Part shown: piece after piece, positions 27,901 through 38,000 of the stretch | Numbering within the stretch: position 1 is the stretch's first letter | Layout: the number at the start of each line of letters is the position of its first letter | Assembly (NCBI RefSeq): GCF_033153115.1 | Contig: NW_026889803.1 | Span: forward strand, 58,590,001 to 58,654,000 | DNA: 64,000 nucleotides | Source: Saccostrea echinata | Taxonomy: Eukaryota | Direction of reading: 5' to 3' | Notes under the pieces: model-generated | What the model was told of the DNA's origin: nothing | Seen by the model: only the letters and a program-made list of their open reading frames with translations | Database searches by the model: none | Made by a program: the position numbers and the translations under genes

Positions 27901-28923
27901 ATATGTAAACCAAATTGTTTTATGTTCTTTTTTACGATAAAAATCATTTTCACAAAAATTCTTAAGAAAGTCATAAGTGCAAAATCTGTCGTAACTTTAC
28001 GAGAGCCCCAACCCTCTCTTAAAGCTATCGCGCAAGAATATAAAGCGTTATGCGTATTACATGCGATACGGTGTCGGCACTATTTCTCTTCTCTACTAAT
28101 ATCTCAATTCCATATATAAGACGTTTGGTCATCGTCACGGGCTGATGCACACTGACCTAAAAGGCCTAGTGTATACATTGATAGGTATGTCAAACCTGTA
28201 CTGTCTATGGGGATTTCTATTTCATTCAAGTAATACAAAATGTAACACTAATCGTAAATCAGAAATGAATAAAAATAATAATTAGTAAAAAAAATAAATA
28301 AAATCAGGATTGAGTAAATAATGTTTTGACACACACTAATAACTTACACGTTATTACAATCGAACTGCAGTGAGAGACACACATCGAACACTACGAAAGT
28401 GGACAATTTGTGGAGACAGTACAAGTTTGATGGATCCAACGGTAAGTAGAAATAAGCATAAAAACGATCAGAATAAAGTATCCAAATTCTTTTACGAAAT
28501 ACATCCAGAGCACATTCACGCCCTTCCGACATGTTGACAAGTCACTTGACAATCCAGTTTTGCTAAAAATAGATAACATAATTTTTTCCATTTTCGTGCG
28601 CATGCCTCTCAAAAGGATCGGTTATTATTTTTTTTATTCAATGAATATATTCAATAATTCAAATACATCCTCCTGCTAATTATTTAAAGGTTTTGCAAGA
28701 AGTATTTAAAACAAAGAGAAAATGGTCTGTCTGTCTTTTATGTTCTACACATTTTAACTAGTCTGTATGATATTCTGCAGAACTCCGGGGGGGGGGGGGG
28801 GGCAGATTTATATATATTACATGAATGTGAGGGTGCATGTTTTCAGATGAATTCTTGCCTTTCTTTCATTCTTCAATGGGGTTAATAGGCAAAATGTAAG
28901 CCGGTATATTTGAGGAAATTTCA

Positions 28924-29017
<94 letters not shown>

Positions 29018-35000: not shown

Positions 35001-38000
35001 TGTACTGTCTCCACAAATTGTCCACTTTCGTAGTGTTCGATGTGTGTCTCTCACTGCAGTTCGATTGTAATAACGTGTAAGTTATTAGTGTGTGTCAAAA
35101 CATTATTTACTCAATCCTGATTTTATTTATTTTTTTACTAATTATTATTTTTACTCATTTCTGATTTACGATTAGTGTTACATTTTGTATTACTTGAATG
35201 AAATAGAAATCCCCATAGACAGTACAGGTTTGACATACCTATCAATGTATACACTAGGCCTTTTAGGTCAGTGTGCATCAGCCCGTGACGATGACCAAAC
35301 GTCTTATATATGGAATTGAGATATTAGTAGAGAAGAGAAATAGTGCCGACACCGTATCGCATGTAATACGCATAACGCTTTATATTCTTGCGCGATAGCT
35401 TTAAGTATTTTAAAACCAATTTTATTGTAAAAATATAACCGCAAAAACCAAAATACACGTTAAACTGAACTTTTTGAAGCAACTTCCAATAATATTTTTT
35501 ATTTTTTTCACAATCACTGTCGAAAAATTAAATAAAATCACTACAAAATATTTACGATGTAAGTTTCACTTAAGATTTTCGTATGACCTACTTTTACGTC
35601 AGACTGGTGTCTGTGACGTCAGATTTCAAACTTACTTGCTTCACAAACGATTGCATTCGATATTTGTTGTTAATAATGTTTGTTATGCTGACAAATGTTG
35701 AAAACTAAGTTTTATTTTTATTTTCACCCACTTAGTTAAGGATTATAAAGCATGTTTAAGTCGTTGCTAGGGATGAAGTCTGTCGTAAGTAAAATCTTAA
35801 GTTCAATCTGCTACGAATGCGTTCATGAAACGCACTTAAGATTTGTCGTAAGAGATTCTTAAGTTAAAATCTTACGCAAAAACTTAAGATTTTTTGTGAA
35901 AAGGGCTACAGTAGTGTATGCCATATTGTATAACAAACTTTCAAATCGGAATCATCACTTGTAATTATTTAAGACTTCTGAAGATACAACAACCAAAATG
36001 AGGATTTTGGTAATATAATATTATAATTTTGAGAATGGAGTAAGATACACTACTGTTCCATATTATGGAAAAACCATTTCACTCGACACTATACCTTACT
36101 GGACTATAATCAAAGATAAAATTCCTCAAAAGGTTTTGGATCCCCTGTATGGTTTTTCGAGAGAACAAAAAGTTCATGTAACACAAGAAAAAGAATACAT
36201 GTTCTCATACCATGAATTGAAAGTATCAAACCCTTTACTTTGGACTGTCACATAAAATCAGAGACAGCACTCTTTTACAACCAAATTTTTAAGATGAACC
36301 CGAAGCGGATGAGTGGACAGTTTTTATTGTCTCCTGTATCATTGAAATGACATATAAATATTCCACAGTACAATGATGCAATTGTGACATTTCTATCATA
36401 TTCATTTTTTTTTTTCAGATTGATTATGTTCTTTATGTACTTTCCTTCAATGTTAATGTATGCTAAAGTTTGAAATGTACATTGTATTTTTACATTTACA
36501 AATTTCCGATCGTATTTCACTCAAATAAAATGGGAATCTCAAAATGGTTTGAATTATTATTTCTAGTGTTTTAGGGTAATTACCTTTTGGTATCTCTACT
36601 TTTAATAAAAATTTCTATATAAATGCCTGTTTTAATAAGATGTTCAAAACGTCGGAAGTGCCACTTACGACCTACAACTAGTTGTTTTATTGCGTAATCT
36701 TTCAACAATAAGGTCGTAAGTGGCAGTTACGACAATTCATATCTGTATTGATATAAAATACTAAAAGGTCGTATCTGTAAAATATTTGCTTGTATTAACT
36801 ATTTTCATGCATGAATTGGATTAAAAATGTGTTTTCTTGCATTATAAAAAGAAAATAAAACACCCTTCAACTTAAGGTCCACAGTCATGTAATATATTCT
36901 TTGAAAAACAATTTTTATTGCCTCCTGTAAAGTACCAAAATTCCACATAAGACCTTTCATTTCCACGGCGTCGTTGTATGCGAAACATTCACTATATACA
37001 AGTGAAAAATAGCACAATATTGATGGCATATTAAAGCCTTCTTTGTGCAGATTAGAAATGCAATAAAATAATGTGATTTTTGCCATAAGTCTTTAGAAAA
37101 TTCGAGACCTTCCTTTCTAAAGTGCTTAAAATGAAAATATACTAGTATTCAGTGAACAGCTCAGTAGAAAGAAAAATCAGTTTTAGTTTTTGTTTGTTTT
37201 TTGGGGGGAGAGTGGGGGTTGGGGTGGGGACAATTGAACAAAAGTTCATTGACAAGCAAAAAGACCAAAGAAAGGTCAACAGAGTGACGTTCTTTAGCTT
37301 TGTTTCCGATTGTATACTATTTGATCGCATGTATTTAAGGAAACAGTCACCCCGTACCCCCTCCCCTCGCATGGTGAAATATAAATATATACATATGTTA
37401 TAAATGTCATGACCCCTGGAGGTCAAATACAATGTACCTCAAAACAATTGAGTTTCAAATATAAATAATATAAAAGTAAATAAAAAAAATTATGTCAGGT
37501 TAATATTTTATGATTCTTTCCCATTCTGTACATATTACGCAAACGTACAAACACCTAAATCCGGATGAATAAAACGAAATAAAAATTATGACCAGTATCT
37601 GTTGAAAAAATTCTTTCGACCGCACCGATTTATGCGAGTCGGCCGGCAACGCCAAACAAAGCTAATTTTATTTTTGGCCTCATAAGCTTACATGTATATG
37701 ATTGAATTGATTTCATCAAACATTTTTTGACTTTGATAAACTTGATGATGTTTTAATCCCTATCTTATTTTTGCATGATATTAAATTACATAATATATGT
37801 TTCCTATAATCTAATTGATTTATATATATATATATATATATAAAATAAAAATATTCAAAGGTTAAAAACTTATAAAGTTTGACAAACTCAAAATATTTTT
37901 GCTGAAATCAATTGCTTAAATAGATGTTCTGTGCTTCCTGATATACTTTATTTTAGCAAATAAAATATACATCAAGATAGTCATGTTGTGTATTTTATTT

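What the first reader, a model, noticed from the sequence alone, without database searches (positions are those of the whole stretch)
28023..35400. Kolobok transposon with ~600-bp TIRs that may serve as a duplicated promoter and start exon for both convergent genes
Seen: both TIRs hold an inward-facing ATG GAT CCA ACG followed by a consensus donor GTAAGT (28430-28441 on +; 34994-34983 on -). On the left it joins phase 0 to ag|GTT TCT GTG AAC (29114), giving MDPT-VSVNMMESEEE of the transposase. On the right it joins phase 0 to ag|ATA AAT TGT TGT (34121), giving MDPT-INCCACQ of KolX. The KolX Cys-rich exon has no in-frame ATG ahead of its Cys domain, so it needs an upstream start exon. Known: Kolobok elements make TTAA TSDs, have RR..YY ends, usually have short TIRs, and carry a transposase plus an accessory gene; the KolobokP group has long DIRECT terminal repeats. 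Inference: one promoter/5'UTR/start-exon module was copied in inverted orientation to both ends, co-regulating two unrelated proteins that share four N-terminal residues. I do not know of this architecture being described, but cannot check.
Basis: partly seen in the sequence, partly recalled or inferred. Interest (0 to 1): 0.9.

Follow-up and report, generated by a model that had tools for sequence, protein, structure and literature searches.

The report
Oyster Kolobok transposon sharing first exon
A young two-gene Kolobok DNA transposon in an oyster genome has unusually long (607 bp) inverted ends that each carry the same tiny start exon, and RNA data show this exon spliced onto the transposase gene, an arrangement that resembles maize MuDR but goes one step further.

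Summary
Window 28023-35400 is a 7,378-bp Kolobok element of the Kol0 lineage with TTAA duplications, AG...CT termini and 607-bp TIRs. It holds a 12-exon DDE transposase (+) and a convergent KolX gene with a P2X7-ballast domain (-). Both TIRs carry ATGGATCCAACG|GTAAGT.

The genome (most likely Saccostrea echinata) has at least 5 full copies at 96-98% identity at unrelated TTAA sites. All copies with both ends have the long TIRs.

An RNA contig joins the TIR donor to transposase exon 2, exactly at 28441>29114. For KolX no junction contig was seen. However, two NCBI gene models start MDPT|INCCACQ. A second Kol0 family in the same genome and its Magallana gigas relatives also have a 4-codon start micro-exon (MASN) near the KolX-side tip, and a spliced mRNA contig supports it in the M. 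gigas relatives.

That second family has TIRs of only about 15 bp. The long TIR is therefore derived, most likely by copying the KolX-side end onto the transposase side.

A promoter in the TIR and co-regulation were not shown, because contigs cannot give a transcription start. Homologous transposases start at the exon-2 ATG, so the shared MDPT may be incidental there. Maize MuDR (promoters in its TIRs, two convergent genes) is a clear precedent, so this is a new variant of a known kind. The window's transposase carries a premature stop.

The parts
28019..28022 (.). Left TTAA target-site duplication
   Evidence: TTAA next to the terminus in all copies, with unrelated flanks
28023..28629 (+). 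Left TIR (607 bp, terminus 5'-AGCTATCGCG)
   Evidence: arms 98.0-99.7% identical within a copy; homology ends near base 607
28430..28441 (+). Start micro-exon ATGGATCCAACG (MDPT) in the left TIR, donor GTAAGT at 28442
   Evidence: joint 419/420>5313/5312 on L006, which equals window 28441>29114 (mapped)
29114..29161 (+). Transposase exon 2, holding the conserved native start ATGATG at 29126
   Evidence: homologues start MM/MD followed by an acidic stretch
29700..32840 (+). Transposase exons 3-10: 29700-29827, 29938-30121, 30658-30843, 30933-31035, 31675-31890, 31995-32241, 32335-32412, 32533-32840. All introns are GT-AG.
   Evidence: RNA contig joints, mapped. The exon 3 acceptor is inferred. 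The DDE triad and DxWH motif are invariant in 10 homologues.
32375..32377 (+). Premature TGA in exon 9 of the window copy (TGG in five other copies)
33079..33243 (+). Transposase exon 11
   Evidence: NCBI models P0234/P0052; length fits X1 record 3
33902..33927 (+). Transposase terminal coding exon (G)LALSSSI*, antisense to KolX exon 2
   Evidence: P0052 C-terminus; X1 record 3 reaches it
33262..33756 (-). KolX exon 3, P2X7 cytoplasmic ballast domain, including the stop codon
   Evidence: Pfam PF20478 at E 1.5e-18; 98% identical to XP_061185203.1
33861..34121 (-). KolX exon 2, CXC-like Cys cluster, no own start codon
   Evidence: the Cys cluster is conserved as coding sequence in oyster relatives
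34983..34994 (-). Start micro-exon ATGGATCCAACG (MDPT) in the right TIR, donor GTAAGT below it
   Evidence: NCBI models P0001/P0037 start MDPT|INCCACQ
34798..35400 (-). Right TIR
35401..35404 (.). Right TTAA target-site duplication

Best explanation
This is one copy, with a broken transposase, of a young autonomous Kolobok (Kol0 lineage) DNA transposon family in an oyster genome, most likely Saccostrea echinata. In this family the terminal ~600 bp of the KolX side was copied in inverted orientation onto the transposase side. That stretch holds KolX's 5' leader, its 4-codon start micro-exon and a GT donor. The copying made 607-bp TIRs, so both convergent genes now splice from an identical TIR-borne first exon.

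KolX needs this exon for its only start codon. The transposase gains an in-frame 8-residue extension (MDPTVSVN) ahead of its conserved exon-2 start. Shown here: the repeat, the TSDs, the family, the TIR>transposase exon 2 splice in RNA, and the intron-exon structure. Inferred: use of the TIR exon by KolX, a promoter inside the TIR and hence co-regulation, the direction of the duplication, and which AUG is translated for the transposase.
For: TIRs, TTAA duplications and AG termini. At least 5 full copies at 96-98% identity plus older 87-92% copies, all with long arms.

Of 20 TIR arms examined, 19 keep the ATG and all 20 keep GTAAGT.

A spliced RNA contig in run X1 (496 nt, depth 16.5) joins the TIR at ...CCAACG to GTTTCT of exon 2. 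Only the canonical GT..AG placement fits. X1 has no coverage of intron 1 upstream of exon 2.

Seven further GT-AG transposase introns appear in up to four runs, so these runs are RNA.

NCBI models XP_061185203.1 and XP_061169579.1 start MDPT|INCCACQ.

Family B in the same genome has ATGGCATCCAAT|GTAAGA (MASN) 259 nt from its KolX-side tip and an acceptor before QCCPCENRG. M. gigas relatives read MASN|HCCPCENRG, one of them from a 1,093-nt contig that must be spliced. Other oyster KolX models start MNP[IL].

Family B has TIRs of only ~15 bp, and its KolX-side end occurs once per copy.

The X2 contig over KolX exon 2 ends exactly one base before the predicted acceptor. That base is a G shared by the intron's AG and by the last base of the TIR exon, as expected at a splice branch in an assembly graph.
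Against: No contig joining 34983 to 34121 was listed in the four runs. In X1, X3 and X4 the contigs over KolX exon 2 run colinearly past the acceptor, and X1 covers the region up to about 34483. I read this as the transposase 3' UTR, but the contigs are unstranded.

Only one contig in one run shows the transposase junction. Unspliced contigs cross both donors.

The X1 contig covers the whole TIR and about 30 nt beyond its tip, so transcription may enter from outside the element.

Eight ATGs lie upstream of the MDPT ATG in the TIR, and its Kozak context is weak (T at -3). Homologous transposases start at the exon-2 ATG, and no NCBI transposase model carries MDPT.

The only diverged relatives of family A (L021/L022, a single dead lineage) read ATA...|TT at the micro-exon.
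Confidence: 0.62

Rival explanations
1. The TIR micro-exon belongs functionally to KolX only. On the transposase side the duplicated copy acts at most as a non-coding leader or an occasional splice form. The transposase is translated from the conserved exon-2 ATG (29126), so the shared MDPT is an accident of the TIR extension with no co-regulatory meaning.
For: All homologous transposases start at an MM/MD acidic N-terminus matching exon 2. The exon-2 ATGs have A at -3 while the TIR ATG has T at -3. An in-frame, stop-free join has a chance probability of about 0.2. Only one contig in one run shows the junction. Family B's transposase also has an upstream exon with no role in coding.
Against: In X1 the junction contig has depth 16.5 and there is no coverage of intron 1. 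The TIR-spliced form is therefore a substantial share of the exon-2-containing RNA there. By the scanning rule an upstream in-frame AUG would normally be used at least in part.
Confidence: 0.25
2. KolX does not use the TIR exon. Its transcripts start in the unique interior (about 34480) or elsewhere, and the MDPT start in the NCBI models is a gene-prediction artefact.
For: Contigs in X1, X3 and X4 run colinearly through the predicted acceptor, and X1 covers 34327-34483 at depth 55. No 420>1297 joint was listed.
Against: A colinear transcript has a TAG directly before the Cys-rich exon and no AUG for it, yet the Cys cluster is conserved as coding sequence across oyster species. The same 4-codon micro-exon architecture is seen in spliced mRNA of a related family. 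The colinear coverage is explained by the transposase's terminal exon and 3' UTR, which run antisense through this region, and its depths are close to those of the transposase contigs.
Confidence: 0.13
3. The long TIRs serve transposition only, for example as extra transposase binding sites or as a by-product of repair. Transcripts through them are read-through from flanking DNA, and there is no promoter in the TIR.
For: The X1 contig extends over the full TIR and about 30 nt beyond the tip. No transcription start data exist. There are eight upstream ATGs in the TIR.
Against: An autonomous element inserted at unrelated sites must carry its own promoters. In family B the KolX start exon lies only 259 nt from the tip, which leaves the terminal region as the only place for one. 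Unstranded contigs merge outward read-through from the opposite arm with the true 5' exon.
Confidence: 0.2

Closest known systems
Kolobok Kol0 lineage (Kolobok-1_XT type; Kojima & Bao 2022, PMC9587614)
   Same: TTAA TSD, 5'-AG...CT-3' termini, a DDD/E transposase with a DxxH motif, and a second protein KolX with the P2X7 cytoplasmic ballast fold.
   Different: The TIRs are 607 bp and contain a coding start exon and a splice donor used by the transposase gene, and probably by KolX. I found no description of this in the papers searched. Repbase could not be consulted.
Second Kol0 family in the same genome (family B, L050:476-8739) and its Magallana gigas relatives
   Same: Convergent transposase and KolX genes, a 4-codon KolX start micro-exon near the KolX-side tip, and a transposase terminal exon antisense to KolX exon 2.
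   Different: The TIRs are only about 12-15 bp and the KolX-side end occurs once per copy. The transposase has its own separate upstream exon.
Maize MuDR (Mutator superfamily; PMC3440606 and references there)
   Same: Two convergently transcribed genes (transposase plus helper) driven from nearly identical TIRs that hold the promoters and transcription starts. Antisense RNA arises where the two transcripts meet.
   Different: It belongs to a different superfamily (9-bp TSD, ~215-bp TIRs, plants). As far as I recall, the MuDR TIRs give leaders but no shared start codon or shared splice donor. Here the promoter function itself is still untested.
KolobokP (PMC9587614)
   Same: Kolobok elements of oysters with long terminal repeats.
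   Different: KolobokP repeats are direct, have short TIRs of their own, and accompany a His-Me nuclease rather than KolX.

Membership tests
Kolobok superfamily | [quoted passage not shown] | tested here: met
   TTAA on both sides of the window copy and of four other full copies with unrelated flanks
Kolobok superfamily | Termini 5'-RR ... YY-3' (AG in Xenopus XKol) | tested here: met
   5'-AGCTATCGCG ... CGCGATAGCT-3'; definitions in PMC9587614 and PMC6004289
Kolobok superfamily | [quoted passage not shown] | tested here: met
   D153, D222, D244-x-W-H247 and E365 are invariant in 10 homologues (alignment A2). This signature is shared with hAT, P, MuDR and Dada, so it is necessary but not sufficient.
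Kolobok superfamily | Transposase clusters with curated Kolobok transposases (Repbase) | not testable with these tools
   No Repbase or Dfam library is on hand. Pfam has no Kolobok model and gave no hit.
Kol0 lineage | Second gene KolX with the P2X7 ballast fold and its conserved Cys residues | tested here: met
   PF20478 at E 1.5e-18 on window 33265-33819(-); the lineage is defined in PMC9587614
piggyBac (also has a TTAA TSD; a few families carry KolX-like genes) | piggyBac-type transposase (Pfam DDE_Tnp_1_7) and CCC...GGG termini | tested here: not met
   No Pfam hit on any transposase exon; the termini are AG...CT
MuDR-like architecture (functional analogy, not membership) | Promoters and transcription starts of both convergent genes inside the TIRs | tested here: inconclusive
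   RNA contigs contain the TIR, and one is spliced from it, but contigs cannot show a transcription start

The most novel reading that the evidence does not exclude
A DNA transposon lengthened its TIRs by copying one gene's promoter, leader, start codon and splice donor to the other end. Two unrelated, convergent proteins are therefore transcribed from identical promoters and begin with the same four residues. Their 3' coding exons overlap antisense in a way conserved between families, which builds a dsRNA source into the element.
Probability: 0.4. Interest if true: 0.6.

Novelty: new variant of a known kind. Interest (0 to 1): 0.5.

Why it matters
This would be the first case known to me, outside plant MuDR, of TIR-borne expression modules serving both genes of a two-gene transposon. 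It is also the first case I know of where the module includes a shared coding exon. It shows one concrete way in which long TIRs can arise: one end captures the other end's 5' gene module. The same family offers a natural system for asking how the transposase and KolX, the ancestor of the P2X7 ballast domain, are co-expressed. For genome annotation, it explains why transposase models of this family are truncated at the N-terminus and why the KolX start lies inside a repeat.

Tried and rejected
The annotated mRNA ends of the NCBI KolX and transposase genes could therefore not be read.
- **KolX exon 2 alone** as a protein query found nothing. The length filter limits that search.
- **NCBI transposase models of this family** are all truncated at the N-terminus, so they neither support nor contradict MDPT.
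- **The diverged relatives L021/L022** turned out to be one dead lineage. They share a SINE insertion in the TIR and have no left end, so their ATA...|TT says little.
- **blastn between the ends of family A and family B** gave no significant match. The likeness of ATGGATCCAACG|GTAAG to ATGGCATCCAAT|GTAAG is only suggestive.
- **Conservation of the micro-exon among the 20 TIR arms** is no higher than that of the rest of the TIR, because the family is too young for a selection test.
- **piggyBac** was considered and rejected (termini).
- **Joined models:** Exons were searched by reference, and joined translations were only frame-checked in scripts.
- only one read-laying run was allowed. KolX intron 2 and transposase intron 10 were therefore not observed in reads.
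Full report
**Observation**

The repeat finder gives inverted arms at 28018-28629 and 34798-35405, made of 297 nt at 100%, 285 nt at 98% and 45 nt at 96%. Reading the ends shows TTAA|AGCTATCGCG... on the left and its mirror image on the right.

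ATGGATCCAACGGTAAGT occurs exactly at 28430-28447 (+) and 34994-34977 (-).

**Family and organism**

A search of the window's own 923-Mb assembly found four more full-length copies at 96-98% identity (C30, C28, C12, C27). It also found an internally deleted copy (C29, L006), older copies at 87-92% (C30:3.92 Mb, C39), several truncated ones, and two diverged, dead relatives at 70-79% (C33, C81).

A multiple alignment shows unrelated flanks and TTAA on both sides of each full copy. These are true transposition products.

Every copy that has both ends has long arms. Arms within one copy are 98.0-99.7% identical. Left-to-left arms average 99.1% and right-to-right arms 99.3%. Fixed left/right differences appear only from about base 590.

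The proteins are 98-100% identical to NCBI models of Saccostrea echinata, so the genome is that species or a very close relative.

**What the element is**

The ORF at 33265-33819 (-) matches Pfam P2RX7_C (PF20478) at E 1.5e-18. Kojima and Bao 2022 (PMC9587614) define the Kol0 lineage of Kolobok as encoding a DDD/E transposase plus KolX, and show that KolX has the P2X7 ballast fold. They state that Kolobok makes TTAA duplications and ends 5'-RR...YY-3'. Xenopus Kolobok elements end in AG (PMC6004289).

The transposase exons have no Pfam hit, which excludes the piggyBac transposase family. [quoted passage not shown] That is the signature quoted for Kolobok and four other superfamilies. I could not compare with Repbase.

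**RNA evidence**

The contigs carry seven joints with CT..AC ends, which are GT-AG introns of the minus-strand gene in L006, in up to four runs. These runs are therefore RNA. Mapped to the window, and combined with NCBI models for the last two exons, the joints give a 12-exon transposase:
- 28430-28441
- 29114-29161
- 29700-29827
- 29938-30121
- 30658-30843
- 30933-31035
- 31675-31890
- 31995-32241
- 32335-32412
- 32533-32840
- 33079-33243
- 33902-33927

This totals 566 codons.

Record 1 of run X1 (496 nt, depth 16.5) runs along the TIR to ...CCAACG and then continues, on the opposite strand of L006, at GTTTCT of exon 2. The three ambiguous letters allow four placements, and only 420|5312 gives GT..AG. 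The aligner simply placed the TIR part on the other, identical arm.

X1 has no coverage of intron 1 just upstream of exon 2, so the TIR-spliced form is not a trace product in that run. Other contigs cross both donors unspliced (X3 348-444, X4 5791-5954). One X2 contig joins intron 1 sequence to exon 2.

**KolX**

No contig joining the TIR donor to 34121 was listed. In X1, X3 and X4 the contigs over KolX exon 2 continue colinearly past the acceptor to the edge of a masked repeat. X1 also covers about 34327-34483 at depth 55. Taken alone this looks like the refuting case.

Three things argue otherwise:

1. The transposase's terminal coding exon ((G)LALSSSI*, 33902-33927) lies antisense inside KolX exon 2. 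Its 3' UTR must therefore run through 34121 on the + strand. The depths of these contigs (55-80 in X1) are close to that of the transposase contig (64.8). The contigs are unstranded, so this reading is an inference.

2. The X2 contig ends exactly at L006:1296. That base is the single G shared by the intron's AG and by the last base of the TIR exon. An assembly graph would branch at that point if spliced and colinear forms coexist.

3. A colinear transcript cannot translate the Cys cluster. A TAG precedes the cluster in frame, and the first Met follows it. Yet the cluster CCxCxNRGxCKSCxCxRRxCTNC is conserved as coding sequence in oyster relatives.

Independent support comes from annotation and from relatives. 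Two NCBI models (XP_061185203.1 and XP_061169579.1, 255 aa) begin MDPT|INCCACQ and match my exon model 34994-34983 | 34121-33861 | 33756-33262. In a Magallana gigas KolX cluster, several sequences read MASN|HCCPCENRG at the same exon boundary. One of them is a 251-aa ORF on a 1,093-nt contig, which can only be spliced mRNA. Other contigs carry intron-derived N-termini.

I then examined a second Kol0 family in the window's genome (family B, 59% transposase identity). Its C29 copy is L050:476-8739, with TTAA on both sides, termini AGCTCTACTGA... and a TIR of only about 12-15 bp. Its KolX-side end holds ATGGCATCCAAT|GTAAGA (MASN) 259 nt from the tip, and an acceptor ttag|CAGTGCTGTCCC before QCCPCENRG. 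That end occurs once per copy and in one orientation.

A 4-codon start micro-exon close to the KolX-side tip is therefore an old feature of oyster KolX genes. Other models start MNP[IL]. In family A this micro-exon now sits in a repeat present at both ends.

**Direction of the change and meaning for the transposase**

Family B's transposase has its ATG in an exon preceded by its own acceptor, so it too has an upstream non-coding exon. Homologous transposases from Saccostrea, Crassostrea, Magallana and Lottia start with an MM/MD acidic stretch. This corresponds to exon 2 of the window element, MMESEEE at 29126.

The simplest history is that the KolX-side terminal ~600 bp replaced the transposase-side end. 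That gave the transposase KolX's first exon. The borrowed ATG happens to be in frame with the native start and free of stops, which has a chance probability of roughly 0.2.

Which AUG is used is open. The TIR AUG has T at -3 and the exon-2 AUGs have A at -3. Eight further ATGs lie upstream in the TIR. MDPT is therefore the first AUG only if transcription starts within about 105 nt of it.

**What is not shown**

Contigs cannot give a transcription start. The X1 contig spans the whole TIR and about 30 nt beyond its tip. That could be read-through from outside. It could also be outward read-through from the opposite arm merged into the contig by the unstranded assembler.

A promoter in the TIR is a reasonable inference, because an autonomous element needs one and the space upstream of the start exon lies entirely within the TIR. 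It remains untested, and so does co-regulation.

**Comparison with what is known**

Maize MuDR has two convergently transcribed genes, ~215-bp TIRs that contain the promoters and transcription starts of both genes, and antisense RNA where termination fails between them (PMC3440606).

Three things differ here. The superfamily is Kolobok. The repeat is about three times longer. The duplicated module reaches into the coding sequence and includes a splice donor. Full-text searches found no description of long, exon-bearing TIRs in Kolobok, and Repbase was not available. I rate this as a new variant of a known kind.

**State of the window copy**

The transposase reading frame has a premature TGA at 32375-32377 in exon 9, where five other copies read TGG. 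KolX is open.

**Limits**

- The single read-laying run used a deleted copy, so KolX intron 2 and the transposase's exon 10-11 intron rest on NCBI models and on contig length arithmetic.

Noticed in passing
window 33902-33927 (+) against 33861-34121 (-); also L050:6760-6786: The transposase's last coding exon ((G)LALSSSI*) is encoded antisense inside KolX exon 2 (NQMLEDRAR). Its last intron therefore spans KolX exon 3. The same arrangement holds in family B (GLAAASSK*), and homologous C-termini (GLELPSKI, GMAASSRR) suggest that it is conserved. This gives a built-in convergent coding overlap.
   Followed up: partly
window 32375-32377: There is a premature TGA (W to stop) in transposase exon 9 of the window copy only. 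Copies L002-L006 read TGG.
   Followed up: yes
L050:476-8739 (G000 C29:31140475-31148738): This is a second two-gene Kol0 Kolobok family. It is 8.3 kb long, has a TTAA TSD and ~15-bp TIRs, and carries a KolX start micro-exon MASN 259 nt from the right tip. Copies lie on C19, C46 and C33.
   Followed up: yes
window 31271-31626 and 34298-34617: Two interspersed repeats are nested in transposase intron 6 and in KolX intron 1. They match dozens of other loci at 74-84% identity and are flanked by poly-G or poly-T runs. They are present in all copies of the element.
   Followed up: no
window 28925-29013: A (TA)n microsatellite of about 90 bp lies in transposase intron 1. Its length varies between copies.
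   Followed up: no
L021:1594-2700 and L022:1424-2465: Two diverged (70-79%) dead relatives of the element share the same ~350-bp SINE-like insertion at TIR base ~78 and lack a left end. They are probably a segmental duplicate of a single old copy. Both read ATAGATAC.ACG|TTAAGT at the micro-exon.
   Followed up: partly
window 21482-21847 (-) and 38206-38637 (-): The flanking host sequence has a Ninjurin-domain exon (E 4.5e-19) and a weak thrombospondin type-1 hit. The element lies between or within host genes.
   Followed up: no
proteins P0004, P0007: Some oyster KolX models start MNP[IL]CQFK. They have a similar 3-4-codon start joined just after the Cys cluster, which suggests an alternative acceptor or a family that has lost the cluster.
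   Followed up: no
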